This document shows, piece after piece, positions 21,433 to 58,447 of a DNA stretch of 64,000 bases. The stretch's first letter is position 1; each line of letters begins with the position of its first letter. The position numbers were made by a program, and so were the translations under genes. Location of the stretch: the IMG/VR virus record IMGVR_UViG_3300047445_000186, positions 186,001 through 250,000 of that record; one strand, 5' to 3'. The notes under the pieces are model-generated. The model was not told where the DNA came from. It worked only from the letters and a program-made list of their open reading frames with translations, and ran no database searches.

Positions 21433-22326
21433 ATGTTCTCACTGCTGAAACAAATTCTCACCGAGGGTGGGAAAGCTACCGAAAAGCTCGGTACCGTTCG
21501 CGCCGATCAGGCTGCCATGAAGGCTGCGATCGAGTTCGTATCGAAGACCACTGGCATGAAGGCCTCTGTTCTGGCCGATCGACTGCTCGGCTCTGCTCGC
21601 CTGACGTACAACGGGAAGCAGAAAGACAGCGGTGACGTGGACATCGCCGTGAATGAAACGGAAGTCGATAAGGACTCGATCGTTCAGAAGATGACCGATG
21701 CATGCGGAAATCCTCCACACGTCACTGGTGGTTCGACGTACAGCTTCGCGGTTCCGGCTGGTGAGATCAAAGTTCAGGTTGACCTGATGTTCGTGCCTGA
21801 TGTCGATTGGGCAAAGTTCTCGCACTTCGCAGCAGAGAACAGCAAGCACAAGAGCGGCGTTCGTAATGAGCTGATTCACTCGGCCCTGAAGTACTCGATG
21901 AAGGCAGGTCAGGACGTTCGTGTGAAGGACAAGGAAGGGAACGACATCGTTCGCGCTTCGCGTGCGTACAAGCTGGACGTTGGTGTCGAGCGCCTGTTCA
22001 AGGTTGCCCCAATCCGCAAGGACGGCAAGGGTCGCGTGAAGGGCGTGAAGCCAGCGAATCCAGACGAAGTCGAGCAGACTCTAAAGGACCTCGGTCTGAA
22101 GCGGAACTTCAGCAAAGAACCTGACATCATTCGCGACCCGACCACGTTCGCGAACATGCTCTTTGGTCCAGACGTTTCGCCAGATGACATGGCCTCGACC
22201 GAGCAGATGATCGCGCTGATCGCGAAGTACAAGAAAAAGTACGCGGCCGAGATCTTCCGTGACGCGGTGAAGGGGATCAAGCGCCTGAAGTTCCCGGTTC
22301 CTGACGAACTGAAACAGTACGAGTAA
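21433..22326 (+). CDS. Pol-beta-superfamily nucleotidyltransferase-like protein
   Basis: LLGS-x9-SGDVDIAV and a later VQVDLMF (third acidic residue). Confidence 0.6.
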   Translation: MFSLLKQILTEGGKATEKLGTVRADQAAMKAAIEFVSKTTGMKASVLADRLLGSARLTYNGKQKDSGDVDIAVNETEVDKDSIVQKMTDACGNPPHVTGGSTYSFAVPAGEIKVQVDLMFVPDVDWAKFSHFAAENSKHKSGVRNELIHSALKYSMKAGQDVRVKDKEGNDIVRASRAYKLDVGVERLFKVAPIRKDGKGRVKGVKPANPDEVEQTLKDLGLKRNFSKEPDIIRDPTTFANMLFGPDVSPDDMASTEQMIALIAKYKKKYAAEIFRDAVKGIKRLKFPVPDELKQYE

Positions 22327-22364
22327 CCGACCGTTACGAAGTCTGGCCGGCCATGGTGTACAAT
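22323..22364 (+). promoter_or_regulatory. GTTAC(G)-N20-TACAAT promoter, copy 1
   Basis: GTAAC 22323, GTTACG 22333-22338, TG-TACAAT 22359-22364, ATG at 22370. Confidence 0.65.
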
Positions 22365-22369
22365 TTACC

Positions 22370-22687
22370 ATGACCAAACCATCTACCCCGCGGCAGATGA
22401 ACAAGACCGTGGCCGAGTACTTCGAGGCCAGTGGGTGGAGTTCGTCCCTGTTCGTCGAGCACGCGAAGTACGTGTTCGCAGAGCTCAAGGAAGCTCAGAT
22501 CATCATCGGCCGGACCGTGATCCACGTCGAAAAAGGTCCGAAGAAGATCAAAGTGTACGTGCACTACGCCGGGAAGTCGCGTGAATTCGTGACGATCACG
22601 GACCGGTACGGCATGCCGATCGAGGTGTACCACTACAAGTCCAGTCCTGAAGCTCTGCTGAAGGCGATCAGGGACCACCTGGTCTGA
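22370..22687 (+). CDS. Hypothetical protein (105 aa)
   Basis: Directly downstream of the TACAAT box; phage-like codon usage. Confidence 0.7.
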   Translation: MTKPSTPRQMNKTVAEYFEASGWSSSLFVEHAKYVFAELKEAQIIIGRTVIHVEKGPKKIKVYVHYAGKSREFVTITDRYGMPIEVYHYKSSPEALLKAIRDHLV

Positions 22688-22696
22688 CGGTGTTTA

Positions 22697-22727
22697 GCTA
22701 AACAAAAGAGGGACCCTAGGGTCCCTC
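22697..22727. terminator. Palindromic bidirectional terminator-like element, copy 2
   Basis: GAGGGACCCTAGGGTCCCTC 20-bp palindrome at 22708-22727 between convergent genes. Confidence 0.7.
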
Positions 22728-22754
22728 GGCTGTTTCTGGTGGCACGGTAAGTGC

Positions 22755-24599
22755 TTAGGCACCGCACTTGCACATGCCGGCCTTCAGCTCGTCGATCTGA
22801 GCTTGCTGGGCCTTCACAGCTTCAACGAGCAGACCAACCAAGTTACCGTACGCGACCGACAGGTAACCTTCTTCGTGCGTTTCAACAGCTTCAGGAGCGA
22901 CAGCAATGACGTCCTGAGCGATCAGACCAGTACCACGGATACCGTCGTGAATGCGGGTGAAGTTCACACCAGTAAGCTTCATGACCTTAGCGATCGCGTC
23001 TTCGATCGGCGTAATGTCCTTCTTAGCGCGGCGGTCAGAGAAAGCCGTGACGTTACCCTGAGCGGTGATCGCGCCACCAGCGTAGATGTTACCCGTCATC
23101 GAAGCGCCACCTGCAACACGAAGAGCGCCGTTGTCAGCGTTCCAGTTACCGGAGTTTGCACCGCTCTGAGCGATCAGGTACTGACCGTACGCGGCGTTCG
23201 TTGCCACGGTGTTCACACCTTGGACGTTACCCGTATTGGAAACGATAGCACCACCACCAGAAGTGATCTGACCAGTTGCGTAGATCGCACCAGCGGTCGA
23301 GATCGCGGATGTTGCGTGCGTGAACGTGATGCCGTTGATGACCAGATTGCCGGACATCGTGGAACCATCGCGACGGACGTAGTTCGCGTTCGCCACGGTT
23401 GCTGAGACGTATCCAACTGCATTGCCGAGCTGGCCAACTTCAGTCAGATTCTGATTGTCCCAGAGCGTTCCCCATGCACCCCACGAGCCGACTGTACCGC
23501 TGTCATCGTTCACACGGAAGCGCAGACCGCGAGCAGCAGTTTCTTCAAGGTTCCAGTTCGCTGCGATCTGCAGACCACGAGCGCCTGCTGGAGCAGATTG
23601 ACCCATCAGCGTCAGACCAACTTGGTATTGGCCGATGTCAGACGTGAAGTAGCTGTCAAAGCCGGAGATCGAGTAAGCGGGGAATGTCGTTGGAGCTGGG
23701 GAAGCGGTGCCTGCATCACCGAAATCATAGAACAGAGTTGGACGGCCGGAGACGCCAGTCCAAGGCACGTTCGATGCGTTCGTTGCATTGATCGCGTTCG
23801 TGGCGTTATTTGCGTTGTTCGCAGTAGATGCGTTCGTCGCGAATCCGACGCTCAGGGCGGATTGGGATGCCCACGTTGGAGCAGCAGCACCACCAGAGAG
23901 CAGGACTTGCAGCGCAACACCAGCGGCTGTCGTACCGATCTGCGAAGTGCTAGCGCCGTAAGCGACACCACCAGCGATCGTCGAAGTAGAACCCGTACCA
24001 CCGCGCGTGACAGCGAGGGTACCAGTCGCCATGTTCGATGCGTTCTGATAAAAAGCGCCTTGTTGACCGTCAAGCAGGTCAGCGTCAAGAGTCGAACCAG
24101 CGCCGTCATTGCCAGCGTGCCAGACTTGTTGACCGAGCCATGTCAGACCCGCATCGAGAGACTGAACGCTGATTCCAAGCCCTGGAGTGAGGGTGCCACC
24201 AGTCGACCAATTCGTACCTTGACCGATATTCAGATTGCCGTTCAGACCTTCGAGAACGACTGGCAGCGCGCCGCCATTCTGATTGCCGATCAGGATACGC
24301 TGAACACCGGTGTTCTTCGTGACGCGCAGAACATCAGGAACTGTCAGTGGGCCTGTCAGGACACCACCACCTGTGCTCAGGTACAGATCAGGCGAAACGG
24401 CCGAGGTCCAACCTTGTTGAACTTGCGAGCCGAACTGGCCTGGGTTCGAGTCCTTGATGAACCCGAACAGGTACAGACCCGACGAACCGCCGATCGCGCT
24501 GTCTGTTTTGTAGAACAATGCACCGTCTGATGCTTGTCCTACGGTAGGCAGCGTCGGACCGTAAGAAATGAGTGCGCCGCCGTTGAGGATCTTTGCCAT
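22755..24599 (-). CDS. Tail fibre with C-terminal S74 chaperone
   Basis: Start MAKILNGG with GGAG RBS and TAAATA at 24635-24640; LDADLLDG, TLAVTRGGTG, FSDRRAKKDI...VAYGNLVGLLVEAVK. Confidence 0.85.
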   Translation of the reverse strand: MAKILNGGALISYGPTLPTVGQASDGALFYKTDSAIGGSSGLYLFGFIKDSNPGQFGSQVQQGWTSAVSPDLYLSTGGGVLTGPLTVPDVLRVTKNTGVQRILIGNQNGGALPVVLEGLNGNLNIGQGTNWSTGGTLTPGLGISVQSLDAGLTWLGQQVWHAGNDGAGSTLDADLLDGQQGAFYQNASNMATGTLAVTRGGTGSTSTIAGGVAYGASTSQIGTTAAGVALQVLLSGGAAAPTWASQSALSVGFATNASTANNANNATNAINATNASNVPWTGVSGRPTLFYDFGDAGTASPAPTTFPAYSISGFDSYFTSDIGQYQVGLTLMGQSAPAGARGLQIAANWNLEETAARGLRFRVNDDSGTVGSWGAWGTLWDNQNLTEVGQLGNAVGYVSATVANANYVRRDGSTMSGNLVINGITFTHATSAISTAGAIYATGQITSGGGAIVSNTGNVQGVNTVATNAAYGQYLIAQSGANSGNWNADNGALRVAGGASMTGNIYAGGAITAQGNVTAFSDRRAKKDITPIEDAIAKVMKLTGVNFTRIHDGIRGTGLIAQDVIAVAPEAVETHEEGYLSVAYGNLVGLLVEAVKAQQAQIDELKAGMCKCGA

Positions 24600-24666
24600 T
24601 TGTGCTCCAGGACTTCTGGGTAAATTCGATCCAGTATTTAGCCCGAACCTCCTCTCTGGACGAACT

Positions 24667-24688
24667 TGTAACGTCTGTTCGTTACAAT
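24667..24688 (+). promoter_or_regulatory. TGTAAC-N8-GTTACAAT promoter/operator
   Basis: Inverted repeat whose right arm overlaps a TACAAT -10 box, 21 nt upstream of 24710. Confidence 0.6.
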
Positions 24689-24709
24689 TGAACATTCATA
24701 GGAGAGTAC

Positions 24710-25762: not shown

Positions 25763-25763
25763 A

Positions 25764-26601: not shown

Positions 26602-26617
26602 AGTCTAGAATACCTCA

Positions 26618-28363: not shown

Positions 28364-28374
28364 CCCGGTACAGG

Positions 28375-31207: not shown

Positions 31208-31352
31208 GATCAATCTCCTGGTTTAATCGACCACCATCGGCCGATGTGTCTAATGTATCCCGAACCTGGCCAAACGTGTTTGGCGAATTGTAATGAACTG
31301 TAACAGCCGGCCAACTCAGTATTTCATCGTCCCAATTTGGCCCCGAGAAGCC

Positions 31353-37027: not shown

Positions 37028-37102
37028 CGGGTATTTACCAAGTCGTTACGACGTTACAGATTCGTCGTCCCAGATCCTCGGCGCTGGTATAAGATGCCAG
37101 TC

Positions 37103-37486
37103 ATGCTACAAACGACCTACAAACTGAACACGCTCACGGCCACCGGCTGGGTCCGTTCGGAAACGACCGAGCTGAACGTGGGCGACAAGATCACGTTCAG
37201 GTGCAATGGCCGCGGTCGTGGTGGTCACTTCAACGTCACGGCGATCGTGACGAAGATCAAGCGGAAGACGATCGACTGCACGGAAGCCGAGCGCTCGTAC
37301 CGCCCAGGAACTCCCTGGTGCGTGAACAAGGAAGATGTCACGATTATGCGTGAAGCGCCGACCGTGTTCCTTCCGCTCGAGATGTCCGAGCGCGCGATCA
37401 AGCGCAGGATGGAAACCGCGTGGGACCTGCCCGGTGGATTTCTCGACAAGATCAATCTCGACATTCCCGTGCGGGAAATGAAATGA
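37103..37486 (+). CDS. Hypothetical protein, SH3-like
   Basis: LNVGDKITF; start is 37094 or 37103. Confidence 0.65.
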   Translation: MLQTTYKLNTLTATGWVRSETTELNVGDKITFRCNGRGRGGHFNVTAIVTKIKRKTIDCTEAERSYRPGTPWCVNKEDVTIMREAPTVFLPLEMSERAIKRRMETAWDLPGGFLDKINLDIPVREMK

Positions 37487-39459: not shown

Positions 39460-39549
39460 ATGAACTGGCATCTTGTCTGGACTCTGTCTCCAGTCTGGGG
39501 ACCCATTCTCGTACTTGGCCTCGCGCTGATCGTGAAAGGGGAGTTGTAA
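39460..39549 (+). CDS. 29-aa membrane micro-protein
   Basis: MNWHLVWTLSPVWGPILVLGLALIVKGEL fills the intergenic gap. Confidence 0.5.
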   Translation: MNWHLVWTLSPVWGPILVLGLALIVKGEL

Positions 39550-39595
39550 CGGTGCCGATCACCGTTACAGATTGACCCTGCAAGTGTGGTACAAT
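39545..39595 (+). promoter_or_regulatory. TGTAAC-N13-GTTACA-N20-TACAAT promoter, copy 2
   Basis: TGTAACGGT / ACCGTTACA inverted repeat; GTTACA 39564-39569, TACAAT 39590-39595. Confidence 0.7.
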
Positions 39596-39601
39596 TCACC
39601 C

Positions 39602-41143
39602 ATGAACACCACACTGAACCCTGTCGCCGAAGCTGCTGCCGCAGTCTTCCTGCCCAGCCCTCAGCAAGCGGACTTCTTCAAGTGGATCCTTGAAGGCGTT
39701 GGCTCCTGCGTTCTGGAAGCTGTCGCTGGTGCCGGCAAGACGACCACGCTGATTCAAGCGCTTGGCCTGATGGTCGGAACGATCTTCCTCGGTGCATTCT
39801 CGAAGAACATCGCGGTCGAGATCGAAGCACGCGCGCCGAAGAAGCCGGGTCTGTTCATCAGCACGATGCATGCTGCTGGTTTCAGGGCCTGGCGCCGCGC
39901 CGCTCCGAAGGTCCGCATCGACGAAGACAAGTGCCGGAACATCTTCCGCAATGCGTGCCTGAAGTACCCCGAGTACAAGCCATTCGAGCAGCCGGTCCTG
40001 AAGCTCGTCGAAATGGCAAAGCAATCCGCCGTCGGTATCACGAAGTCCGAAGCTGACCGGAACGTGTGGGTCGAGATCATCGAGCACTTCGACATCGAGA
40101 CTTTCGACGAAGAACTCGGCGTCGACAACACGAACAAGATCATCAGCCTCGCTCGCAAGACCCTGCAACGTTCGCAAGAGATGGACATGGACGCCGTTGA
40201 CTTCAACGACATGATCTACGCGCCGCTGTTCCACAACGTGCGTATGTTCGAACACGACTGGGTGCTGGTTGATGAAGCCCAAGACACGAACGAGATTCGT
40301 CGCCTTCTCGCCCTGCGGATGCTGAAGCGCGGTGGACGTCTGGTCGCAGTTGGTGATCGTCACCAAGCGATCTTCGGTTTCACCGGTGCCGATTCGAAGG
40401 CACTCGAGATGATCGCGACGGCCGTGAACGCGAAGCTCCTCCCGCTCACGATCACGTATCGCTGCCCGAAGTCAGTCGTTGCTTACGCAAAGCAATGGGT
40501 GAACCACATCGAAGCTGCCGAAACCGCGCCTGAAGGCGTCGTGTCCCACGGTGATGTGAACAACCTGTTCAGCCTCGCGGTTCCTGGTGACGCAATCCTC
40601 TGCCGCTTCAACGCGCCGCTGATCAAGTATGTGTATCAGTTCATCGCCCGCGGTATTCCCGCGAAGGTCGAAGGTCGCGAAATTGGCGAAGGTCTGAAGG
40701 TCCTCGCACGTCGCTGGAAGGTCAAGAAGCTCGCTGCCATGACCGACAAGCTCGACGCGTACCTCGAGCGTGAAGTCGCGAAATGGCGCGTGAAGGAACA
40801 AGAAGCGAAGGCCGCCGCGGTCGAAGACAAGGTGAACTGCCTCCGCGTGATCATCGATCGCGTCGCCAAGATCGATCCGAACTGCGCGAATCCGGTCGAA
40901 CGCGTTTGTGAAGAAGTCGACGCGATCTTCACCCAAGAAAAGGGACAGAAGGTCGTGCTGTTCAGCTCGATCCACAAGGCCAAGGGTCGCGAATGGCACA
41001 AGGTTGTTTGGCTCCAAACCGGTCCTTCTGCTTGGGCTCGCAAGGAATGGGAACAAGAGCAAGAGGATAACCTCTGCTACGTTGCAGCAACTCGTGCAAA
41101 GCACGAACTCTGCCTGGTCGATATCTCGAAGGAAGAAAAGTGA
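39602..41143 (+). CDS. UvrD/Rep-like SF1 helicase
   Basis: AVAGAGKTT, LVDEAQD, VGDRHQAIFGF, TYRCP, SIHKAKGREW and YVAATRAK. Confidence 0.9.
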   Translation: MNTTLNPVAEAAAAVFLPSPQQADFFKWILEGVGSCVLEAVAGAGKTTTLIQALGLMVGTIFLGAFSKNIAVEIEARAPKKPGLFISTMHAAGFRAWRRAAPKVRIDEDKCRNIFRNACLKYPEYKPFEQPVLKLVEMAKQSAVGITKSEADRNVWVEIIEHFDIETFDEELGVDNTNKIISLARKTLQRSQEMDMDAVDFNDMIYAPLFHNVRMFEHDWVLVDEAQDTNEIRRLLALRMLKRGGRLVAVGDRHQAIFGFTGADSKALEMIATAVNAKLLPLTITYRCPKSVVAYAKQWVNHIEAAETAPEGVVSHGDVNNLFSLAVPGDAILCRFNAPLIKYVYQFIARGIPAKVEGREIGEGLKVLARRWKVKKLAAMTDKLDAYLEREVAKWRVKEQEAKAAAVEDKVNCLRVIIDRVAKIDPNCANPVERVCEEVDAIFTQEKGQKVVLFSSIHKAKGREWHKVVWLQTGPSAWARKEWEQEQEDNLCYVAATRAKHELCLVDISKEEK

Positions 41144-47773: not shown

Positions 47774-47859
47774 GCAAGGTATGTGAACCCGTATTTACGC
47801 TGCCAGAACGAGGTTACGCGATGTACGATTCACCATCGCATCACTAACCTGGAGACAAA

Positions 47860-48141
47860 ATGCGTTCTGGCAGTTTTGGTTACCGTGAAAATGGCGGCTC
47901 GAAGGTCACAAAGGCCTCGCTGCAAGAAGGAATCTTCTCGATGGATTTCATCAGCACGCTGCAGCACCAGCCGCTGGACATCGCGAAACAGGTCTGTCTC
48001 GAGCGAATCGACAATTCGACCGCCACGCCCGAGAACAAGATGAAGGCGCAACAAGCGGTCACGAAGGCAGCCAGCCTGAAGAATCTTCTCCTCACGACTT
48101 CGAACTTCAGCCTCGCGCATCAAGGCATGAAAGTTCTGTAA
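47860..48141 (+). CDS. Hypothetical protein
   Basis: TG-TACGAT box and RBS TGGAG upstream. Confidence 0.65.
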   Translation: MRSGSFGYRENGGSKVTKASLQEGIFSMDFISTLQHQPLDIAKQVCLERIDNSTATPENKMKAQQAVTKAASLKNLLLTTSNFSLAHQGMKVL

Positions 48142-48186
48142 CGGTTACCGACTCGTTACAGAGTCGGCCCAGGTTTGGTGTACAAT
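48137..48186 (+). promoter_or_regulatory. TGTAAC-N12-GTTACA-N20-TACAAT promoter, copy 3
   Basis: GTTACA 48155-48160, TG-TACAAT 48181-48186. Confidence 0.7.
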
Positions 48187-48214
48187 GCACCATCGCATCA
48201 AACCTGGAGCTTGA

Positions 48215-48439
48215 ATGCCGCGAACGCAAGACGAACTCTCGGCTGCTTTTGACCTCGTCAAGAACAGCACGCACTGGAAGAAGCCGATCAACGCACGTGT
48301 CGCCCTGACGGATGAGCAGGTCGACGCCGTGCACGAAGCCGTGATCCACTTCACTGGCTCGATCGCCACGATCACGAACCTCCCGAACGGCAAGCGCCAC
48401 GTCCGCGCCGCCGGGTACTACGCCACGATCGGAGCTTGA
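48215..48439 (+). CDS. Hypothetical protein
   Basis: RBS TGGAG; C-terminal VRAAGYYATIG. Confidence 0.7.
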   Translation: MPRTQDELSAAFDLVKNSTHWKKPINARVALTDEQVDAVHEAVIHFTGSIATITNLPNGKRHVRAAGYYATIGA

Positions 48440-48440: not shown

Positions 48441-48728
48441 ATGCTGAAGTTCAAACTGGGCCAGCGCGTCGTCGCGACCCGCACGATCCACAAAGGCGCC
48501 GTTGGCACGATCGCGATGATCCCCTCCTCGCTGCGCGAAGGCAAACGCTGGGTGTACGTCCAGCGCGATGATCGCGTGTCGCCGACCTGGTTCTTCGAGG
48601 ACGAGCTCGAGGCGACGACCGAGCGCGTTCAAGACCTTCGCGCTCGCCTTGCCGTGATGCAGAACGACCCCACGCACGCCTTGATGGCGACCACCATTTC
48701 CAAACTGATCGGAGAACCGAATGTCTGA
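48441..48728 (+). CDS. Hypothetical protein, SH3/KOW-like
   Basis: FKLGQRVV...KGAVGTI. Confidence 0.6.
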   Translation: MLKFKLGQRVVATRTIHKGAVGTIAMIPSSLREGKRWVYVQRDDRVSPTWFFEDELEATTERVQDLRARLAVMQNDPTHALMATTISKLIGEPNV

Positions 48729-49017
48729 CTTCCACATCGACCTCGATTTCGTGCTCGAAGAAACGCGGAACAAGATGAACCGCGTGTGCGTCCAAGGCGA
48801 GCTGCGCGCGGAGCTGAAGAAGCGCGCGATCACGAGCCGCGTTCTCCAGGAGAACGGCCCGGCCGGCGGGAACCCGCTCGTTCGTTTGTACGGCACGCGC
48901 CGCGCGCTCGAGACGTACGTTCGTGAAGAGTACTGCAAGGAAAACGGGGCCGAAGACGCCGAGTTCCACATCGGGTTCATCAAGCGAAACGAGGGTCGCA
49001 GCCATGGCCAAGTCTAA
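48721..49017 (+). CDS. Hypothetical protein
   Basis: RBS GGAG; contains GPAGGNP. Confidence 0.65.
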   Translation: MSDFHIDLDFVLEETRNKMNRVCVQGELRAELKKRAITSRVLQENGPAGGNPLVRLYGTRRALETYVREEYCKENGAEDAEFHIGFIKRNEGRSHGQV

Positions 49018-49276
49018 GTTGCTCAGCATCAACGACGTCTGGGACGCTCGTCGTGTCTCGAAGTACCTCGGGCCCATGCTGGTCGATCTCGAAGATTCGA
49101 TTATGAAGACCCCGACGGGGCCGGCCCGCGACGTCCTGACCGAGGCGAACATCCTCGTGATGCAGGCCCAGGCGCTCCTTCACGCGTTCGATGGGCGATG
49201 CGTGAAGGAGCACTACCAGCGCACGCCAGAAGATTGGGCGGCCGAGCTCCCAAAGGACGGAGGGCATGATGCCTGA
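49004..49276 (+). CDS. Hypothetical protein
   Basis: RBS GAGGG; overlaps both neighbours. Confidence 0.6.
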   Translation: MAKSKLLSINDVWDARRVSKYLGPMLVDLEDSIMKTPTGPARDVLTEANILVMQAQALLHAFDGRCVKEHYQRTPEDWAAELPKDGGHDA

Positions 49277-50132
49277 AGGACCTGAAGTGAAACGGATCGC
49301 GGCGGGCCTCGAGTCCCTCCAAGGGAAGACGATCGCAAGCGGGCAAGTCGTGTCGGGCCGTTATCTGCGCGGCCAAGAGATCACGTTCGAGACGATCATC
49401 GGCGCGAAGGTCGAGCGCGTGATCTGCAAGGGGAAGCTGATCGCGTTTCACTTGAAGGGTGCCGAGGGGCCGCTGGCGATCTTGAGCACGATGGGGATGA
49501 TGGGCCGTTGGATCGTCTTGACCGAGGCGAACAGCGACTTGGATGCGCACCGTCGTGTCGAGCTCACGTTCGATGACGGCACAATCGCCGCGTTCTTCGA
49601 CCCTCGGAATTTCGGCACGTTCAAGATCGTGTCGTACGCCGAGATGAAGCGGAAAATGCAGGAGCTCGGCCCCGACATCCTCACGGCGCCAGGGCACTGG
49701 CATGCAATCGCCCTGCCCGAGTTCTACGAGCGCGTTCGCCGATTTGGCAAGGATCTCTCGCTTGCCGAAGGGCTTCTGGACCAACGAATCTGCTCTGGCT
49801 GTGGGAACTACATCAGGGCCGACGCGATGTGGCTGGCGCGCTTCTCGCCCAAACGGCGCATGTCCGAGATGACTGACGCCGATCTGAAGCGGATCTGGAT
49901 CGCGATGCATGAAATCGCGATCGCGGCGGCCGAGAACAAGGTCCCACCACTGCACATGGACGGCGAAGGGCATCACAGCGCTCTGATCCAGATCTCGAAA
50001 GAGATCAGCGCCGTCGGCGAATTCTTCAACCTCGCTTATGGCCAGCCCGAAACTGCAAGTGGCGGTATGATCGAGTCTTACAAGGACTCGAATGGTCGCA
50101 CGGTGTGGTGGTGCCCCAAGGAACAGAAATGA
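49269..50132 (+). CDS. Fpg/Nei-family DNA glycosylase/AP lyase
   Basis: N-terminal MPEGPEV, KGK, MGMMG and H2TH LLDQRICSGCGNYIRADAMW; no four-Cys zinc finger. Confidence 0.9.
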   Translation: MPEGPEVKRIAAGLESLQGKTIASGQVVSGRYLRGQEITFETIIGAKVERVICKGKLIAFHLKGAEGPLAILSTMGMMGRWIVLTEANSDLDAHRRVELTFDDGTIAAFFDPRNFGTFKIVSYAEMKRKMQELGPDILTAPGHWHAIALPEFYERVRRFGKDLSLAEGLLDQRICSGCGNYIRADAMWLARFSPKRRMSEMTDADLKRIWIAMHEIAIAAAENKVPPLHMDGEGHHSALIQISKEISAVGEFFNLAYGQPETASGGMIESYKDSNGRTVWWCPKEQK

Positions 50133-52132: not shown

Positions 52133-54037
52133 ATGACAAAACACATCGCACAAACGTACCAGGTGCTCGACGAGATCGAACACGTCCGTCGCAGAACGGG
52201 CATGTACGCAGGCAGCACCGAGCTGCAGACCGCCAGTGAGTGGGTGTACGACCCGATCGAAAAGAAGATGGTCAAGCGGACTATCTCGTACATCCCAGCG
52301 CTGGTGAAGGTCTTCTCCGAAATTCTGGACAACGCAATCGACGAGCATCGTCGCCAGCCCATGGATTCGATTCGCGTCGAGTTCGATCCAAGCGGCATGA
52401 TCAGCGTTCAAGACTCTGGCCGAGGCATTCCAGTCGAGATTCACCCGCAGACCGGGAAGTACGTCGCTGAGACGATCTTCTCGAACATGCGAGCTGGCTC
52501 GAACTTCAATGACAGCGAAGACCAACAACTGATCGGCACGAACGGCGTCGGCTCGACCCTGACGAACATTCTGTCGAAGCACTTCCGCGTCGAATCTTGC
52601 GATGGCAAGAAGCTTCTCACGCAAGACTTCTATGACGGTCTGCGCGAGCGCACCGAGCCGAAGATCAAGCCTGACACGAAGAACCGCACGAAGATCTCAT
52701 TCGTTCCTGACTACGAGTTCTTCAAGCTCCAAGGTCTCGATGGTGATCACGCGCTGAAGATGACGAAGAAGATCGTCGATGCAGCCGCATGTAATCCCGC
52801 TGTGAAGTTCTACGTGAACGGCGAGCGGATCAACGTGCGCGACTTCGGCGATTACATCGGCCTGTACTCAGACGAGTACGTGTACGACGACACCGAAGAC
52901 TGGAAAGTCGGGGTCTCGGCATCGGACGGTTTCGAGCAGATCTCGTTCGTGAACTCGGTCGAGACATACCAAGGCGGAACGCACGTGTTCTACGTGATGG
53001 ACCAGATCACGGAAGCTGTCCGTGCATTCATCAAGAAGAAGCACAAGATCGAGGTGAAGCCAGCCGACATTCGGAATCACATGCGCGTTTACATCAGCGC
53101 GAACGTGAACCGTCCGAAGTTCTCCAGCCAGACGAAGGAGAACATGATCAGCCAGCCCGGCACTTACAAGACCACGTGGTCAGTGCCAGACAAGATGATC
53201 AACAAGCTCTTGAAGAGCCCAATCATTCAGTCCGTTCTGGATTGGGTCACGGCGAAGAGCAAGGCGGCCGAGCTCGCGGAACTGCGGAAAGCTGGTAAGG
53301 ACATCGCGAAGGCGAATCCAAAGCGCGTTGACAAGTTCACTGATGCAGTCGAGAAGCGCGATCGCCACCTGTGCGAATGCTACTTCACCGAAGGCGACTC
53401 TGCTCGGAACTCGATTCAATCGGCTCGAGGGAAGAACAAACTGATCGGCTCGTTCTCGCTGCGTGGCAAGCCACTGAATGTGTACGACACCGAGACGAAG
53501 GAAATCCTGGCGCCCCGCAAGAACGGCGACATGAGTGAATTCGCGAACGTGATGGTCGTCACAGGTTTGCAGTTCGGTGAAACGATCAATCACGTCAGCC
53601 AGCTCCGGTTCGGTAAGCTCGTTGTTCTGTCTGATCAGGACTTGGACGGCTTCCACGTGACCTCGCTGGTCCTGAGCTTCTTCGCGAAGTACTGGCCAGA
53701 ACTGTTCAAGCTTGGCGTGATCTACCGGATGAACACCCCGTTGTACATCGCGACCACGACCAAGGGCGATGTGTTCGAGTTCTTCACCGAAGAAGAGTAC
53801 GAGACCTGGGCAGCCACGGCACCGAAGCACAAGGCCGATTACTTCAAGGGTCTGGGTGGTTTCGATACCGAGACGTTCGAGCGCTTCCTCGAGAATCGCG
53901 AGCGTTATCTGACCCGCATCACTGCGCTCGAAGCCGCCGACTTGGCGAAATTCGAACTCGCGTTCTCGAACACTGAACAGGACGCTCGTAAAGAGTGGCT
54001 CCAAGACATTCGGTACTTCGAGCCAATCGGAGAATAA
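52133..54037 (+). CDS. Type IIA topoisomerase large subunit (T4 gp39+gp60 / GyrB-like, uninterrupted)
   Basis: EHVRRRTGMY, EILDNAIDE, GRGIP, GTNGVGS, EGDSA, LRGKPLN and DQDLDG. Confidence 0.95.
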   Translation: MTKHIAQTYQVLDEIEHVRRRTGMYAGSTELQTASEWVYDPIEKKMVKRTISYIPALVKVFSEILDNAIDEHRRQPMDSIRVEFDPSGMISVQDSGRGIPVEIHPQTGKYVAETIFSNMRAGSNFNDSEDQQLIGTNGVGSTLTNILSKHFRVESCDGKKLLTQDFYDGLRERTEPKIKPDTKNRTKISFVPDYEFFKLQGLDGDHALKMTKKIVDAAACNPAVKFYVNGERINVRDFGDYIGLYSDEYVYDDTEDWKVGVSASDGFEQISFVNSVETYQGGTHVFYVMDQITEAVRAFIKKKHKIEVKPADIRNHMRVYISANVNRPKFSSQTKENMISQPGTYKTTWSVPDKMINKLLKSPIIQSVLDWVTAKSKAAELAELRKAGKDIAKANPKRVDKFTDAVEKRDRHLCECYFTEGDSARNSIQSARGKNKLIGSFSLRGKPLNVYDTETKEILAPRKNGDMSEFANVMVVTGLQFGETINHVSQLRFGKLVVLSDQDLDGFHVTSLVLSFFAKYWPELFKLGVIYRMNTPLYIATTTKGDVFEFFTEEEYETWAATAPKHKADYFKGLGGFDTETFERFLENRERYLTRITALEAADLAKFELAFSNTEQDARKEWLQDIRYFEPIGE

Positions 54038-54038
54038 G

Positions 54039-54254
54039 ATGTTCATACACGGCAAGCGGTACTACACCGATGGGAAGACGACTGCGCAGTTGGAGCACAT
54101 GCTTCAGCTCGCGAAAGACGAACTCGTTCATTACAGGATCGCTTGCCGGAACTATCCTCCTGGTCGCATGGAGCGGCATGGAACGCCGTTCATCATGCGG
54201 CTCGAAGCGAACATCAATGAAATCCAGACTGCATTGAAGGACGATCACTCGTGA
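54039..54254 (+). CDS. Hypothetical protein
   Basis: First of three small ORFs between the topoisomerase genes. Confidence 0.6.
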   Translation: MFIHGKRYYTDGKTTAQLEHMLQLAKDELVHYRIACRNYPPGRMERHGTPFIMRLEANINEIQTALKDDHS

Positions 54255-54496
54255 CAGCAGACCTCCCAGGAAATCCGTGGACGATCACGTACGTTGCTCG
54301 CCACCCGCGCACTGCAAGCGACGTCGAAAAGAAGTACGTCCAATTCGGCCGGCACGCGAACAACGCCGCGATCTTCAAGGAAGTTCGGCGTGATCTGGCC
54401 GAGATCCGTCTGTGGGACATCTATGATGGACACACGAACGAGGCACGTGAAGGCGCGAAGGCCGCACTCCGCCGAATTCTCGATCGGGAACCATGA
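54251..54496 (+). CDS. Hypothetical protein
   Basis: GTGA overlap. Confidence 0.55.
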   Translation: MTADLPGNPWTITYVARHPRTASDVEKKYVQFGRHANNAAIFKEVRRDLAEIRLWDIYDGHTNEAREGAKAALRRILDREP

Positions 54497-54684
54497 TCGA
54501 CGCTAAGACACTCGAGTTCATCAAGACAACTCTGAACGAATCGCAGCAAGAGCATCACTATCTTCCGGGTCATCATGCGGCGAATGTGGAGCATTGCCGC
54601 CGGATCTTGAATCGCGAGATCAAGATCCAAAAGAACCTGAAATTGCTCGGGCAGACTGCAGAACAAGAACATAAAATTCAATAA
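54493..54684 (+). CDS. Hypothetical protein
   Basis: Overlaps both neighbours. Confidence 0.6.
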   Translation: MIDAKTLEFIKTTLNESQQEHHYLPGHHAANVEHCRRILNREIKIQKNLKLLGQTAEQEHKIQ

Positions 54685-56060
54685 TGGCAAAAGAACTTCC
54701 GAACTACAAATTCACGATGGCGGCGTCAGCGCTTGAGCTGAGCGCGTCTCAGTTCATCGACGACAAGCTTCGCCTATATTCCGCGCACTCGAATATCCGT
54801 GGCATTCCATTCATTGGTGACGGCTTCAAGCAGTCCCATCGGAAAGCTCTATGGGGCATGATGCGCCGCGGCGAGAACGCCGACAAGGACACCGTCGAGC
54901 GTATCGCAGCAGCTGGTGCTTCAGCAACCGATTACCACCACGGTGTCGGCTCGTTCGAAGGCACGATCGTTGGGATGGCGCAGGACTATGCGGGCTCGAA
55001 CAATCTGCCGCTCTTCGAAGCGCATGGCCAGTTCGGCAATCGTCTGAACAAGCTCGCGTCTGCTTCGCGGTACATCAAGACGAAGTTCAGCCCGATCTTC
55101 CGTCAACTCTTCCGCAAGGAAGATGACCTGATCTTCGAGCACAACATGTCAAATGGCATGGCCGTCGAACCGAAGTACTTCACACCGATTCTGCCGCTCG
55201 TGCTGATCAACGGCGCCGAAGGCATGGGCACTGGTCACAGCACGTACATCTTGTCGTACAAACCCGACGACATTCGCGCCGCTGTCTTGAAGCTCCTCGA
55301 TGGAAAGACCCTGAAGCCGAACGGCCTGCTCCCATGGTGGCGCGGTTTCAACGGCACGGTTTCTCGCGATCCAGTGTCTGGCCAGATCTCGATCGAAGGG
55401 AAGTACGAGCTGAAGGAAGGGCGATCGCCGACAATCACGATCACCGAGCTTCCGATTGGCGCGCAGTCCGATTCGTACGAAGCCGTTCTGCAGAAGCTCG
55501 AAGACAAGGGTGTGATCGTCTCGTACGACAATCTGTCTGACAAGCGTGGCTTCGAGTTCATCGTGTCCATTCCCCGGATCGCGACAATGATGTCCGACGA
55601 GGAGATCAAGAAGACGTTCAAGCTCATTAGCCGTGAAACCGAGAACCTCACGGTCTGGGACGGTGATGGTGTCCTCACTCGGTACGAAACGGTTGAAGAC
55701 CTCCTCACTGAGTGGACCGTATGGCGTGTCGAGCGGTACGAAGACCGTCGCCTTGCACTGATCAAGAAGATCGAGGCCGACATCACGTGGGCCAGCCTGA
55801 AGATCCGCTTCATTCGGTTCTACCTCGCGAACTACAAGTACTTCCGTGACACGGCGAACAAGGAGCTGAACGCTCGTCTGATCGCTGAAGGGTTTGATCG
55901 CCATGACGAGCTGCTTGCGATGCCGATGCGGAACCTCACGCACGACAAGATCAAGGAACTCGAGGCGGACGTCGAAGATCTGAAGCTGAAGTTGGCCAGT
56001 CTGCAGAAGGACAACGCGATCGAGATGTTCAAGCGCGAGCTGAAAGAACTGAAGCTGTGA
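54684..56060 (+). CDS. Type IIA topoisomerase DNA-cleavage subunit (T4 gp52 / GyrA-like)
   Basis: DGFKQSHRK, YHHG, GQFG, catalytic SRY, LINGAEGMGTG and ITELP. Confidence 0.95.
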   Translation: MAKELPNYKFTMAASALELSASQFIDDKLRLYSAHSNIRGIPFIGDGFKQSHRKALWGMMRRGENADKDTVERIAAAGASATDYHHGVGSFEGTIVGMAQDYAGSNNLPLFEAHGQFGNRLNKLASASRYIKTKFSPIFRQLFRKEDDLIFEHNMSNGMAVEPKYFTPILPLVLINGAEGMGTGHSTYILSYKPDDIRAAVLKLLDGKTLKPNGLLPWWRGFNGTVSRDPVSGQISIEGKYELKEGRSPTITITELPIGAQSDSYEAVLQKLEDKGVIVSYDNLSDKRGFEFIVSIPRIATMMSDEEIKKTFKLISRETENLTVWDGDGVLTRYETVEDLLTEWTVWRVERYEDRRLALIKKIEADITWASLKIRFIRFYLANYKYFRDTANKELNARLIAEGFDRHDELLAMPMRNLTHDKIKELEADVEDLKLKLASLQKDNAIEMFKRELKELKL

Positions 56061-56269
56061 TCTACTCCCGACCACAGGCGGCTCCCGCGTTCGCGCAAAA
56101 GGAGCTCGTGATCACGGACGATCGCACTGTCGATCCAGCGGTTCTGACTGTTGAGCTTGATGGGCAGCTCATCCTGGCGAAACCATCTGGTGATCCGTTC
56201 TCGATGTTCGATCTATTCTCGATCGTCGGGGCCCTTGGGCACGGGGTTGACTACTCCGAGATCCACTGA
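56057..56269 (+). CDS. Hypothetical protein
   Basis: GTGA overlap. Confidence 0.5.
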   Translation: MIYSRPQAAPAFAQKELVITDDRTVDPAVLTVELDGQLILAKPSGDPFSMFDLFSIVGALGHGVDYSEIH

Positions 56270-56296
56270 CCAGAAACTGAAGTTCACTCTGAACTC

Positions 56297-56334
56297 AGGG
56301 CGGTAGAATGAAAGTTCTACCGCCCTTTTGGTTT
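56297..56334 (+). terminator. Intrinsic terminator
   Basis: 12-bp stem AGGGCGGTAGAA / TTCTACCGCCCT followed by TTTGGTTT. Confidence 0.8.
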
Positions 56335-56339
56335 CTGAT

Positions 56340-56648
56340 ATGTCCTTTTCAAAACTGCAACCCGCCCACAAGTACGTGACCGAGATCGCGCAGATGCCGA
56401 CGACCGAACACTGGGCCGTCGTGTACGACGAATCATTCACGTATGACGATGGGTACGGCGACGATCGTCATGGCAAGAGCTACTCCACGAAGTCATACAT
56501 GACGTACCTGTCGTTCGACAATGTCGAGCAGGTCATTGCGTGGATCCATGAGAACGAGAACACGAAGTACGGCTCGCCAAAGACCTTCCGCGTTCTGCAT
56601 GTGAAGCCAGGTGCCGTGAACAAGCAAGTGTCGATCTCGATCGAATGA
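56340..56648 (+). CDS. Hypothetical protein
   Basis: Coupled to the J-domain gene. Confidence 0.65.
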   Translation: MSFSKLQPAHKYVTEIAQMPTTEHWAVVYDESFTYDDGYGDDRHGKSYSTKSYMTYLSFDNVEQVIAWIHENENTKYGSPKTFRVLHVKPGAVNKQVSISIE

Positions 56649-57556
56649 ATCCGTACCTCGTTCTCGGTCTTGAACGGACAGCTACCAAGAAGCAAGCCAA
56701 GGTAGCGTACCGCAAGCTCGCCATGATCCATCACCCGGATCGGGGCGGGGACAAGGCGCGCTTTCAAGAAATTCAGGCCGCCTGGGCCTGGATCGAGAGC
56801 GACAAGCCGGTGCCCCCGGAGACACCCGAGCCGGCCGTTGAGAAGACATACACGTCTTCGTTCACAGACCCACAGGGCCGCACGAGGCCACCTCCACGAC
56901 CGTCTCCGGGCTTTCAGTCCGATCGCCCGACGCAGACCAGAGCCGGTAAGCCGGCTCCAGGTTACGAGGCGAAGGGTCCGCCAAAGCTGCCGAAGACGAA
57001 GACGCACGGTCGAGATCACTCGGTTGTTCTCGAGGTCACGCCACAGCAAGCCGCTCTTGGCTGTATGGTTCCGTTCTTACATACAGATTACGGACGGCCT
57101 TCAAAGCTCGAGCACTGGGTTGCTCCAGGCTCTGGCCCGTACACGGTGTACTGCAGATTCGTGACGGACGAGATGATCGGCTCGCAAGCGCATTCGGTCG
57201 GAATTCATGTCACGGTCAAGATCATCACGCCGAACACGCATGAGTTCATGCACGAGTCGGAGCTGAACGAGAAACCAACTGGGAACATGAAGGTCACGCT
57301 TCGCGTTTCAGCATTGGCGCTTTTCACCGGTGGTCTGCTCGAGACGAAGGACTACCTTGGTGAGACGGTTCCTGTGGTGATGCCACCTGGGTACGATCCA
57401 AGCAAGCCGCTCGTGGTGAACAACAAGGGGTATGGACCGAAGAATAATCGAGGAGATCTGTACGTGCACGTCGAACCGGTCTTCAAGGATCCGAGCAAGT
57501 TAACAACAAGTGATAAGACGCTCTTGACGCGTCTTTACGAACAGGTGAACAGATGA
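56645..57556 (+). CDS. J-domain (DnaJ/CbpA-like) protein 1
   Basis: YLVLGL...[15 protein letters not shown], Pro-rich linker, DnaJ-C-like [13 protein letters not shown]. Confidence 0.85.
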
Positions 57557-58401
57557 GTGATTTGTACGCGACGCTAGGTGTCGCAAAGAATGCGTCGCAA
57601 GACGAGATCAAGAAGGCATACCGAAAGCTTGCGCAGACGCATCACCCTGACAAGGGCGGTGACGAAGCGAAGTTCAAGGAAATCCAGACTGCGTACGACA
57701 CGCTTGGCGACGAGCAGAAGCGAGCTCAACATGATCGCGGTGGGAACGGTCACCAACCATTCGGCGCGTACGGAAATTCGCAGATGGACGACATCTTGCG
57801 GCAGATGCGTGAGTCCATGCATCGAGCGCAGCAAACGTTGCACATGCAGATTCGCGTTCCAATCGCGAAGGCATTCAAGGGCGAGAAGCTTCCGATCACT
57901 GTGAACGGCCGCTCGATCGCGTACCAAGTGAAGGCAGGTATTCCGCAAGGCGTGACGTACATCGACGAGATCCCGTTCGAAGACAAGATGCTCCGCGCCG
58001 AAGTCTCGATCGTGATCGATGGTGGACCATTCCGCTTCATTCGCCCAGGCACGATGGACGGCAGATTCTTCAGCGGCGATCTCGAAGCCGATATCGAAGT
58101 CGACGCGCTTGATCTGATCCTCGGTGGCTGGACTGTCGTGACTGACTTCCTTGGTAAGCAACTTCAAGTCCGCATTCCTGAAGGGTTCGATCTCGCTACT
58201 CGTCTACGCGTTGCTGGCCACGGGTACTCGCACTGGGTCGGCGATGCGCAAAGCGAACGCGGTGATCTGCATCTGCGCGTGATTCCGAAGTTCGGCACAA
58301 TCAAGGATCTCGACGTGAAGAAGATTGAGGACCTCGCAGCTCGAGTTGTTGCAGCGCATGCCGAGCCTGAAGCTCCCGCTGCGGCTGAAGGAGAAGTGTA
58401 A
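57553..58401 (+). CDS. J-domain (DnaJ/CbpA-like) protein 2
   Basis: [32 protein letters not shown]; DnaJ-C-like LRVAGHG...RGDLHL; no Zn finger. Confidence 0.9.
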
Positions 58402-58447
58402 CGCCCATTACACTCGTTACAAACTCGACCGGCGGATGTAGTACAAT
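58397..58447 (+). promoter_or_regulatory. TGTAAC-N13-GTTACA-N20-TACAAT promoter, copy 4
   Basis: GTTACA 58416-58421, TACAAT 58442-58447. Confidence 0.7.

What the first reader, a model, noticed from the sequence alone, without database searches (positions are those of the whole stretch)
22323..58447. Promoter class GTTAC(A/G)-N20-TACAAT with an upstream inverted half-site
Seen: four intergenic sites have exactly 20 nt between GTTAC(A/G) and TACAAT (22333/22359, 39564/39590, 48155/48181, 58416/58442). Each has (T)GTAAC 5-13 nt further upstream, and there is no TTGACA at 17-nt spacing. Similar boxes lie 29-41 nt from -10-like hexamers at 31252-31304 (minus) and 37045-37093. Caveat: in all four, the GTAAC half-site includes the upstream gene's TAA stop, so that arm may be partly coincidental. 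Inference: a phage activator box analogous to the T4 MotA box, or a site for a modified sigma factor, defining an early or middle class.
Basis: partly seen in the sequence, partly recalled or inferred. Interest (0 to 1): 0.65.

Follow-up and report, generated by a model that had tools for sequence, protein, structure and literature searches.

The report
Box-dependent promoter class of jumbo phage
An uncultivated 332-kb rhizosphere phage drives its early and DNA-metabolism genes from about two dozen promoters that pair a normal-looking -10 element (TACAAT) with a conserved box (GTTACAGATT) set at whole helical turns upstream, which points to an unidentified transcription factor, not the usual -35 contact.

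Summary
There are 4 exact GTTACR-N20-TACAAT sites in the window against 0 expected. Across the 331,776-bp genome the box-to-TACAAT spacing peaks at 20-21 nt (13 sites), with smaller peaks at 29-31 and 10-11.

About 24 sites form one class: (C)GTTACAgATT, then ggaTGnnG, then TAcAAT, then tCAcCCAT. All lie on the + strand, ahead of ORFans and DNA-metabolism operons, never ahead of structural genes.

In 18 of 24 sites a second GTWAC box lies within 30 nt upstream, direct or inverted, so the upstream half-site is real. It is a second box copy, not generally a hairpin arm.

Orthologous promoters in relatives (GC 45-58%) keep the boxes while the flanking DNA diverges. When the box sits about 30 nt upstream, a separate -35-like TKTACA usually lies at N16-18. 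At N20 there is none.

Start codons lie exactly 6 nt after the -10 in 20 sites, which implies leaderless mRNAs and gives indirect support for promoter function.

Searches found no MotA, AsiA, gp55, sigma or RNA polymerase gene.

Best reading: host RNA polymerase is recruited by an unidentified box-binding factor. No RNA data exist, so timing and the factor are inferred.

The parts
22323..22372 (+). Class A promoter 1. Distal inverted box GTAAC 22323-27, which holds the TAA stop of ORF 21433-22326. Proximal box GTTACG 22333-38. TGnnG 22354-58. -10 TACAAT 22359-64. ATG 22370, 5 nt after the -10 (leaderless, 105-aa ORF 22370-22687).
37045..37105 (+). Class A promoter, N31 variant. GTTAC 37045-49. 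GTTACAGATT 37053-62. -10 TAAGAT 37090-95. In-frame ATG at 37103, 7 nt after the -10 (ORF to 37486). A late-type TAAATA for the divergent minus-strand genes lies at about 37037.
39546..39604 (+). Class A promoter 2. Distal inverted box TGTAACGG (GTAAC 39546-50). Proximal box GTTACAGATT 39564-73. -10 TACAAT 39590-95. ATG 39602, 6 nt after the -10. The gene is a leaderless UvrD-like helicase, 39602-41143. The two boxes can pair as an RNA hairpin of -14.4 kcal/mol.
47813..47862 (+). Degenerate relative; membership uncertain. GTTACG 47813-18 lies only 5 nt before TACGAT 47824-29. The leader TCACCATCGCATCA is the same as at promoter 3. An SD precedes ATG 47860 (93-aa ORF).
48138..48217 (+). Class A promoter 3. 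GTAAC 48138-42, which holds the TAA stop of ORF 47860-48141. GTTAC 48144-48. Proximal box GTTACA 48155-60. -10 TACAAT 48181-86. Leader with GGAG. ATG 48215 (74-aa ORF). It heads the operon running to the Fpg-like glycosylase (49266-50132) and topoisomerase II (52133-54037).
58398..58479 (+). Class A promoter 4. GTAAC 58398-402, which holds the TAA stop of ORF 57553-58401. Proximal box GTTACA 58416-21. GGATGTAG. -10 TACAAT 58442-47. Leader CAACCCATCGCACAACG. ATG 58465 or the SD-preceded ATG 58477 (ORF to 58689).

Best explanation
These sites are one class of pre-late phage promoters read by the host RNA polymerase.

Anatomy. Each has a sigma-70-type -10 hexamer (TAnnAT, usually TACAAT). It is preceded by a class-specific TGnnG and followed by tCAcCCAT. 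Transcription should start 7 nt after the hexamer. In about a third of sites that nucleotide is the A of the start codon, giving a leaderless mRNA.

The box. In place of a -35 hexamer at 17 nt there is a 7-10-bp box, (C)GTTACA(gATT). Copies sit at quantised distances from the -10 (about 10, 20 and 30 nt, plus an inverted copy about 18 nt beyond the N20 copy), so they lie on one face of the helix.

Inferred mechanism. A trans-acting protein binds these boxes. It is most likely phage-encoded or virion-delivered and has not been identified. At N20 it contacts RNA polymerase and substitutes for the missing -35 contact. At N30 it assists a weak TKTACA -35. This resembles class II and class I activators, lambda CII, PhoB, or T4 MotA in logic.

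Shown: the motif, its spacing law, its gene context, and its conservation in relatives. Inferred: the polymerase used, the existence and origin of the factor, activation as opposed to repression, and timing.
For: 1. Motif and spacing: 4 window sites against 0 expected. Genome-wide peaks at N20-21, N29-31 and N10-11.
2. Phasing: over 24 sites and 47 boxes, direct copies start 16-17, 26-27, 35-37, 45 and 54 nt before the -10, and inverted copies 42-44 nt before it. Rayleigh R = 0.88 at a 10-nt period.
3. Second box: present within 30 nt in 18 of 24 sites, against about 0.02 expected per site. Inverted copies keep the CGTTACA flanks.
4. Division of labour: most N30 sites carry either TTTACA/TGTACA at N16-18 or another box at N10-21 (the window site at 37053 and genome site 20834 are exceptions). 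N20 sites have no -35-like hexamer at 16-18 and no TGn extended -10.
5. Promoter function, indirect: ATGs opening ORFs of 60 aa or more pile up exactly 6 nt after TA[CG]AAT, 20 of 145 against 0-4 at the other offsets up to 22 nt and 1-5 across the SD-led range at 23-30 nt. Six of the 20 sites with a TA[CGT]AAT -10 listed are leaderless, including the 513-aa helicase.
6. Selection on the elements, not on a repeat: flanks average about 0.3 pairwise identity.
7. Footprinting: orthologous helicase promoters in relatives G003, G004 and G005 (65-74% protein identity, GC 45-57%) keep distal box, proximal box, TAnnAT, N6-7 and ATG, while the rest diverges.
8. Clade-wide enrichment: GTTACAGATT occurs 10 times in G000 (0.4 expected) and 14 times in G003 (0.9 expected). 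The N30 architecture recurs in contigs down to 43% topoisomerase II identity.
9. Context: all 24 sites are on the + strand, ahead of ORFans and DNA-metabolism genes. Structural genes instead carry cTAAATAc.
10. Host polymerase: no RNAP or sigma was detected. Canonical sigma-70 promoters are almost absent.
Against: - There is no transcript evidence at all. Only DNA runs from rhizosphere metagenomes hold this sequence.
- No candidate DNA-binding factor was found. Searches for MotA, MotCF, AsiA, OmpR-type winged helix, HTH_3, MerR and sigma region 4 were all empty. The first genes behind these promoters are unannotatable ORFans.
- GTTACA matches TTGACA in 4 of 6 positions, so direct sigma contact over a long spacer is not excluded.
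- Site selection required a box near N20 or N30, so part of the phasing signal is built in.
- Activation and repression cannot be told apart from sequence.
- Three large ORFans (952, 774 and 755 aa) have no assigned function.
Confidence: 0.5

Rival explanations
1. GTTACA is simply the -35 hexamer. Region 4 of the host primary sigma, native or modified by the phage, reads it across an unusually long 20-21-bp spacer. No separate DNA-binding factor exists, and the extra boxes are redundant or vestigial.
For: GTTACA matches TTGACA in 4 of 6 positions. The spacing is sharply fixed, as for a two-hexamer promoter. The -10 is a good sigma-70 hexamer. No phage transcription factor was detected.
Against: Primary-sigma promoters work best at 17 +/- 1 bp (established knowledge). 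The same box recurs at N30-32 together with a separate TKTACA at N16-18, and at N10-11, where it cannot be a -35. Boxes come in inverted orientation, and the conserved unit extends to 10 bp, GTTACAGATT. A second promoter class with the same -10 has a different upstream box and no GTTACA.
Confidence: 0.2
2. The boxes are operators for a repressor. The promoters are early ones read by host polymerase unaided, and a later phage protein binds the GTWAC arrays over and upstream of the -35 region to shut them off.
For: Several boxes overlap the -35 and spacer regions. Some copies sit at N10-11, inside the spacer, which is typical of operators. The N30 sites carry a usable -35. Early shut-off is common in large lytic phages (general knowledge).
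Against: N20 sites lack any -35 or extended -10, so they should be weak without help. Strict helical register with the -10 is expected for a protein that touches polymerase and is not needed for occlusion.
Confidence: 0.15
3. The sites are PeSL-like mobile terminator/promoter cassettes. The inverted half-sites form a stem-loop that ends the upstream transcript, and the repeated unit mainly serves recombination between gene modules.
For: PeSLs of T4-type phages are stem-loops joined to early promoters, scattered next to ORFans (PMC2839356 listed; PMC4122927). The window sites at 39546-69 and 48138-60 fold at -14.4 and -12.4 kcal/mol. A few site pairs share leaders or upstream stretches.
Against: The hairpin is not general: mean z is -0.7 over 24 sites, and many sites have direct repeats or a 1-3-nt gap (G004 sites). 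No T-run follows the stem. Flanks are not conserved (about 0.3 identity). PeSL promoters have N17 spacing.
Confidence: 0.05
4. The whole conserved stretch from about -40 to +2 is the promoter of an unrecognised phage-encoded polymerase or sigma-like factor, not of the host holoenzyme.
For: Conservation is continuous from box to start (box, TGnnG, TACAAT, tCAcCCAT). Three large ORFans (952, 774 and 755 aa) and many small ones have no assigned function. The authors of the related phage RsoM2USA also left this possibility open.
Against: No hit to T7-like RNAP (control silent), RNAP beta, or sigma regions 2 and 4. No D[FY]DGD-type catalytic motif occurs in any ORF of 300 aa or more outside the DNA polymerase. 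The TAnnAT hexamer with a start 7 nt downstream fits sigma-70 geometry.
Confidence: 0.07

Closest known systems
T4 middle promoters (MotA box plus sigma-70 -10, with AsiA 'sigma appropriation')
   Same: A phage-specific upstream box replaces the -35 hexamer in front of a normal TAnnnT -10. The promoters drive pre-replicative genes and coexist with a T4-like late motif (here cTAAATAc).
   Different: The box sequence is GTTACAGATT, not TGCTTtA. It sits 20 nt from the -10, not about 12 nt. It is usually duplicated, in either orientation, and recurs one turn further out. No MotA, MotCF or AsiA homologue was found.
Class I / class II activator promoters with phased repeats (lambda CII TTGC-N6-TTGC; PhoB pho boxes)
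   Same: Short repeats with a period of about 10 bp overlap or replace a poor -35, in fixed register with the -10. The N30 position with its own -35 looks like class I. The N20 position without one looks like class II.
   Different: The factor is unknown. Inverted as well as direct copies occur. No OmpR-type or HTH_3 domain was found in the phage. This is a resemblance in layout only.
PeSL promoter-early stem-loop cassettes of T4-type phages (PMC2839356, PMC4122927)
   Same: Dispersed intergenic units directly follow the preceding stop codon. Some have a stem-loop joined to a promoter, next to ORFans.
   Different: PeSLs carry TTGACA-like hexamers at N17 and a separate stem-loop. Here the 3' arm is the box itself, the spacing is 20, the stem is often absent, and the flanks are not conserved.
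MerR-type promoters (19-20-bp spacer)
   Same: An overlong 20-bp distance separates a -35-like hexamer from the -10.
   Different: No conserved dyad operator lies inside the spacer (sequences). No MerR domain is encoded.

Membership tests
T4 MotA-dependent middle promoter | MotA box (a/t)(a/t)(a/t)TGCTT(t/c)A centred near -30, 11-13 bp from the -10 | tested here: not met
   The box is (C)GTTACAgATT, 20-21 nt from the -10.
T4 MotA-dependent middle promoter | Sigma-70-type -10 (TAnnnT) with no functional -35 | tested here: met
   The -10 is TACAAT or TAnnAT. The hexamer at N17 matches TTGACA in 2 of 6 positions or fewer in the four N20 window sites.
T4 MotA-dependent middle promoter | Phage encodes MotA (activation and DNA-binding domains) and AsiA | tested here: not met
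   PF09114, PF09158 and PF09010 gave no match at E <= 1 in the 331,776-bp genome. Very divergent analogues are not excluded.
Canonical sigma-70 promoter | TTGACA-like -35 at 17 +/- 1 bp from a TATAAT-like -10 | tested here: not met
   The spacing is 20-21 nt. Only the N30 subclass has TTTACA or TGTACA at N16-18.
Canonical sigma-70 promoter | Transcription start about 7 nt downstream of the -10 | not testable with these tools
   No RNA run holds the sequence. The indirect support is the spike of start codons exactly 6 nt after the hexamer.
PeSL cassette | Stable stem-loop immediately upstream of the promoter at most copies | tested here: not met
   Only about 5 of 24 sites fold clearly better than shuffles (mean z = -0.7). 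Many sites have direct repeats.
PeSL cassette | Highly conserved repeat unit, including flanks, that can support recombination | tested here: not met
   Mean pairwise identity is 0.29 upstream and 0.32 downstream of the core. Only 3 of 276 pairs reach 0.7 in either flank.
Activator-dependent promoter with phased boxes (class I/II layout) | Binding sites in fixed helical register with the -10, overlapping or replacing the -35 | tested here: met
   Box start distances cluster at 16-17, 26-27, 35-37 and 42-45 nt, with R = 0.88 at period 10. The layout is conserved in relatives.
Activator-dependent promoter with phased boxes (class I/II layout) | An identified protein that binds the box and is needed for initiation | tested here: inconclusive
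   Eight DNA-binding or sigma families searched gave nothing. Proof needs experiments.
MerR-type promoter | Dyad operator within a 19-20-bp spacer, and a MerR-family regulator | tested here: not met
   There is no conserved dyad in the spacers and no PF13411 match.

The most novel reading that the evidence does not exclude
A clade of uncultivated jumbo phages, distantly related to T4 and lacking recognisable MotA, AsiA, gp55, sigma or RNAP genes, redirects host RNA polymerase with at least two unknown box-binding adaptors. One reads GTTACAGATT (this class). The other reads aaCCyGAa (the larger class B). Both act on promoters without a -35 element, and both are coupled to systematic leaderless translation. 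That would be a new, independently evolved counterpart of sigma appropriation.
Probability: 0.3. Interest if true: 0.7.

Novelty: new variant of a known kind. Interest (0 to 1): 0.5.

Why it matters
Nothing is known about how jumbo phages of the RsoM2USA/XacN1 type are transcribed. The RsoM2USA paper reports no RNA polymerase and does not mention promoters.

This analysis gives a concrete regulatory map for one clade:
- a box-dependent pre-late class (the finding);
- a second, larger box class sharing the same -10;
- a T4-like late motif;
- many leaderless genes.

The map makes gene starts and operons predictable. It defines a short DNA bait for finding the unknown factor. If the factor is phage-encoded, it would add a new way in which phages take over host RNA polymerase. 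The limits are that the phage is uncultivated and its cultured relatives lack the box.

Tried and rejected
- **Nucleotide search against deposited phages:** no match.
- **Cultured relatives (RsoM2USA, XacN1, pf16):** no GTTAC-N20-22-TACAAT. The 10-mer box is no more frequent than its reversed control. The 'phage specific promoters' annotated in pf16 are unrelated sequences.
- **IMG/VR pattern scan:** it returned only near-identical copies of the same phage plus one AT-rich chance hit.
- **Transcript evidence:** only DNA runs hold the stretch, so read laying was not used and no start sites could be checked.
- **Homology searches in the genome, all empty:** Sigma70_r2, r4 and r4_2; T4 gp55 (protein, phrog_234, phrog_12791); MotA; MotCF; AsiA; T7-like RNAP (its control was silent, so this one is uninformative); RNAP beta; OmpR-type; HTH_3; MerR.
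- **Catalytic-motif scan for a hidden two-barrel RNAP:** the only hit was in the DNA polymerase.
- **Large ORFans:** the proteins of 952, 774 and 755 aa gave nothing in Pfam, PHROGs or PDB sequences.
- **GTTAC depletion:** it looked twofold depleted against a mononucleotide model, but that is a composition artefact. Observed over expected is 0.96 under a Markov model.
- **Hairpin or terminator reading of the upstream arm:** rejected as a general feature.
- **Repeat-family reading:** rejected.
- **Rfam:** no family in the window.
- **Literature:** no paper holds both hexamers in a phage context.
Full report
**What the window is.** The window is bases 186001-250000 of a single 331,776-bp contig, GC 54%. 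IMG/VR classes it as a virus record, about 94% complete. It encodes:
- tail fibres, a helicase and T4-type topoisomerase II subunits;
- a T4-like portal, tail sheath, family B DNA polymerase and ribonucleotide reductase.

By topoisomerase II, the nearest deposited phages are Ralstonia phage RsoM2USA (46% identity), Pseudomonas phage pf16 (45%) and Xanthomonas phage XacN1 (37%). Only DNA runs from rhizosphere metagenomes hold the sequence. Contigs that are 99.98-100% identical occur in other IMG/VR samples.

**Check of the observation.** The four GTTACR-N20-TACAAT sites are exactly where stated. None of 100 dinucleotide-preserving shuffles gave a match. GTAAC lies 5-13 nt upstream of each box. 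In three sites it contains the TAA stop of a real upstream ORF. In the fourth, only a 29-codon ORF ends there.

There are 140 GTTAC[AG] boxes and 101 TACAAT hexamers on both strands. Spacing 20 occurs 10 times and spacing 21 three times. Spacings 29-30 occur seven times and 10-11 three times. All other spacings from 5 to 45 occur 0-1 times.

**Anatomy of the class.** I also admitted TAGAAT, TATAAT, TAAGAT, TATGAT and TACTAT as -10 hexamers. This gives 24 sites, all on the + strand, spread from 10.9 kb to 330.6 kb. The consensus is cCGTTACAgATT, a variable stretch, ggaTGnnG, TAcAAT, then tCAcCCAT.
- The T and G at 5 and 4 nt before the hexamer are present in 19 and 23 of 24 sites.
- The G directly before the hexamer is present in 19 of 24 sites.
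- The other TACAAT promoters lack this TGnnG.
- It is not the classical extended -10, which would lie 2 nt closer.

The window site at 37053-37095 is an N31 member with TAAGAT. The minus-strand GTTACA near 31292 is only 6 nt from TACAAT, has no gene behind it, and is not a member.

**The upstream half-site.** A second GTWAC lies within 30 nt upstream in 18 of 24 sites, against about 0.02 expected per site. So it is not an accident of the TAA stop codon.

It is also not one arm of a fixed palindrome. Copies are direct (GTTAC-N4-GTTAC in three sites; GTTAC-N13-GTTAC in three) as often as inverted (GTAAC-N13-GTTAC in four; N1-5 in others). Inverted copies keep the CG and A flanks of the box when read on the other strand.

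Folding the segment gives strong RNA hairpins at only a few sites: window 39546-69 at -14.4 kcal/mol and 48138-60 at -12.4 kcal/mol. The mean z-score over 24 sites is -0.7, and no T-run follows the stems. In relative G004 the two copies are separated by 1-2 nt, too close for a hairpin loop.

**Spacing law.** I measured from box start to -10 start.
- Direct copies fall at 16-17 (3), 26-27 (16), 35-37 (14), 45 and 54 nt.
- Inverted copies fall at 42-44 nt (8).
- The Rayleigh statistic for direct copies at a 10-nt period is R = 0.88.

The 26-27 peak is partly built into the site selection. The other peaks are not.

Where the box lies about 30 nt from the -10, most sites also have one of two things: a -35-like TTTACA or TGTACA at 16-18 nt, or a further box at N10-21. 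The exceptions are window 37053 and genome site 20834. Where the box lies at 20 nt, nothing resembles a -35 at 16-18 nt.

Canonical sigma-70 promoters are almost absent from this genome. Only six noncoding sites reach 10 of 12 matches, and three of those are the N30 subclass. The generic scan of 38-49 kb finds fewer hits than shuffles do.

**Indirect evidence that these are working promoters.** ATG codons opening ORFs of 60 aa or more pile up exactly 6 nt after TA[CG]AAT: 20 of 145 hexamers, against 0-4 at the other offsets up to 22 nt. A broad SD-led hump follows at 23-30 nt, and control hexamers show nothing. That places the A of the start codon at the expected transcription start, so these are leaderless mRNAs. 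Within class A:
- 22370: 105-aa ORF;
- 39602: 513-aa UvrD-like helicase;
- four sites outside the window.

Rfam finds no known RNA in the window.

**Gene context.** The first genes behind class A promoters are mostly ORFans with no Pfam or PHROG function. The operons continue into a UvrD-like helicase, an FRD3-like protein, an Fpg-type glycosylase, topoisomerase II and a cpYpsA protein. None precedes the minus-strand structural blocks. Those blocks carry cTAAATAc 20-35 nt before their start codons, which is a T4-like late motif. The class is therefore pre-late. Early versus middle cannot be told.

**Other promoter classes sharing the -10.** TACAAT is not specific to this class. About 35-40 further sites (class B) have the box aaCCyGAa 29-31 nt upstream, often GGGAC at 21 nt, and cgtTA[CG]AATtg. 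They drive:
- a thymidylate-synthase-family enzyme;
- the 581-aa helicase;
- an AAA ATPase;
- the topoisomerase II medium subunit;
- a Tpt1 RNA 2'-phosphotransferase.

Most of these genes are leaderless. Class B also lacks a -35.

**Conservation.** The 24 sites are not copies of a repeat. Flank identity is about 0.3, and only 3 of 276 pairs reach 0.7 in either flank.

IMG/VR relatives with about 80% topoisomerase II identity but GC from 45% to 58% were fetched whole. Upstream of the helicase orthologue (65-74% protein identity) each keeps a distal box, a proximal GTTACA/G, a TAnnAT, 6-7 nt and then ATG, while the rest has diverged. The spacing is N19 in G004, and N27-32 with an inner TGTAC(A/G) in G003 and G005.

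GTTACAGATT occurs 14 times in G003 (0.9 expected) and 10 times in G000 (0.4 expected). G004 has six N9-N20 sites, all leaderless. The N30 architecture recurs in contigs with only 52% and 43% topoisomerase II identity. The cultured relatives RsoM2USA, XacN1 and pf16 lack it.

**Which polymerase and which factor.** The following were not found:
- Sigma70 regions 2 and 4;
- T4 gp55, by protein and two PHROG profiles;
- MotA or MotCF, and AsiA;
- RNAP beta;
- T7-like RNAP (its control was silent, so this is weak);
- OmpR-type, HTH_3 and MerR domains.

No D[FY]DGD-type catalytic motif occurs in any ORF of 300 aa or more outside the DNA polymerase. Three large ORFans remain unexplained.

I infer that host polymerase with its primary sigma reads the TAnnAT hexamer. 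The box is conserved across phages whose GC content suggests different hosts. It is therefore more likely read by a phage protein, or by a universal part of the polymerase, than by a host-specific regulator.

**Mechanism proposed.** A box-binding protein sits on one face of the helix. At N20 it replaces the missing -35 contact (class II layout). At N30 it helps a weak TKTACA -35 (class I layout). Extra copies provide cooperative binding.

The rivals are:
- direct reading of GTTACA as a -35 across a 20-bp spacer;
- a repressor operator;
- a PeSL-like terminator/promoter cassette;
- an unrecognised phage polymerase.

Their weights are given in the Rival explanations section.

**Comparison with known systems.** In logic the class is closest to T4 MotA-dependent middle promoters. 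It fails the membership tests for box sequence, box position and presence of MotA/AsiA. In layout it resembles lambda CII or PhoB sites. It shares only its dispersed, post-stop-codon placement with PeSLs. No paper in the searchable library describes the motif, and the RsoM2USA paper does not mention promoters.

**Verdict.** This is a real, conserved promoter class, a new variant of the phage 'box plus -10' design. The trans-acting factor and the timing are unproven.

Noticed in passing
window 24683, 26606, 28399, 31366, 44405, 54672, 60871 (-10 starts); about 35-40 sites genome-wide: A second and larger promoter class shares the TA[CG]AAT -10. Its upstream box is aaCCyGAa at 29-31 nt, often with GGGAC at 21 nt, and the -10 context is cgtTACAATtg. 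It drives a thymidylate-synthase-family gene, the helicase, an AAA ATPase, the topoisomerase II medium subunit and Tpt1.
   Followed up: partly
genome-wide; in the window e.g. ATG 22370, 26618, 28410, 37103, 39602, 54684, 60883: Leaderless genes are widespread. Start codons of long ORFs lie exactly 6 nt after the -10 hexamer: 20 of 145 TA[CG]AAT hexamers, and 27 (plus 9 at 7 nt) for TAnnAT. Relatives G003-G005 show the same. This is unusual for phages whose cultured relatives infect proteobacteria.
   Followed up: partly
window minus strand at 8237, 13368, 14630, 21402, 24640, 37037, 47797: A T4-like late motif, cTAAATAc, lies 20-35 nt before the start codons of the minus-strand structural genes, including both tail-fibre genes. 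There are 78 noncoding copies genome-wide. Even so, no gp55 homologue was detected.
   Followed up: partly
class A sites, e.g. window 22350-22372 and 48176-48192; genome 82664, 252216: The -10 hexamer is often flanked by a short inverted repeat whose sequence varies between sites (GGATG/CATCC, CATGGT/ACCATG, TGGTG/CACCA, TCGATA/TATCGA). Matched flanks pair better than flanks swapped between sites: 4.28 against 3.58 bp for class A, z about 3. The effect is modest and its meaning is unknown.
   Followed up: partly
window 1-4392 (+): The phage carries the bacterial PrkA / DUF444 (YeaH) / SpoVR stress-response gene trio. PrkA is at genome 185369-187327 (window up to 1327), DUF444 at 1405-2778 and SpoVR at 2848-4392, all with very strong Pfam scores.
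   Followed up: partly
genome 1261-4119, 298206-300530 and 300527-302794 (outside the window): Three large ORFs (952, 774 and 755 aa; the last two adjacent) have no Pfam, PHROG or PDB-sequence match. They are the main unknowns if a hidden transcription enzyme is sought.
   Followed up: partly
L005 11762-13607: A 99.99%-identical contig from another sample (G001, 234,547 bp) runs about 1.8 kb past the end of this contig, so the 331,776-bp record is not the full genome. Contigs 99.98-100% identical to this phage come from several IMG/VR samples, and several rhizosphere metagenome runs hold the window stretch.
   Followed up: no
window 47813-47862: A degenerate copy of promoter 3 has the same leader (TCACCATCGCATCA) and TACGAT as its -10, but the GTTACG box is only 5 nt upstream. 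It sits one gene before the true class A site at 48155.
   Followed up: no
window 48721-49017, 49266-50132, 59398-60021, 60883-61431: Accessory genes in the class A/B operons include an FRD3-like protein (below the Pfam cut-off), an Fpg/Nei-type DNA glycosylase, a circularly permuted YpsA (SLOG) protein and a Tpt1/KptA RNA 2'-phosphotransferase.
   Followed up: no
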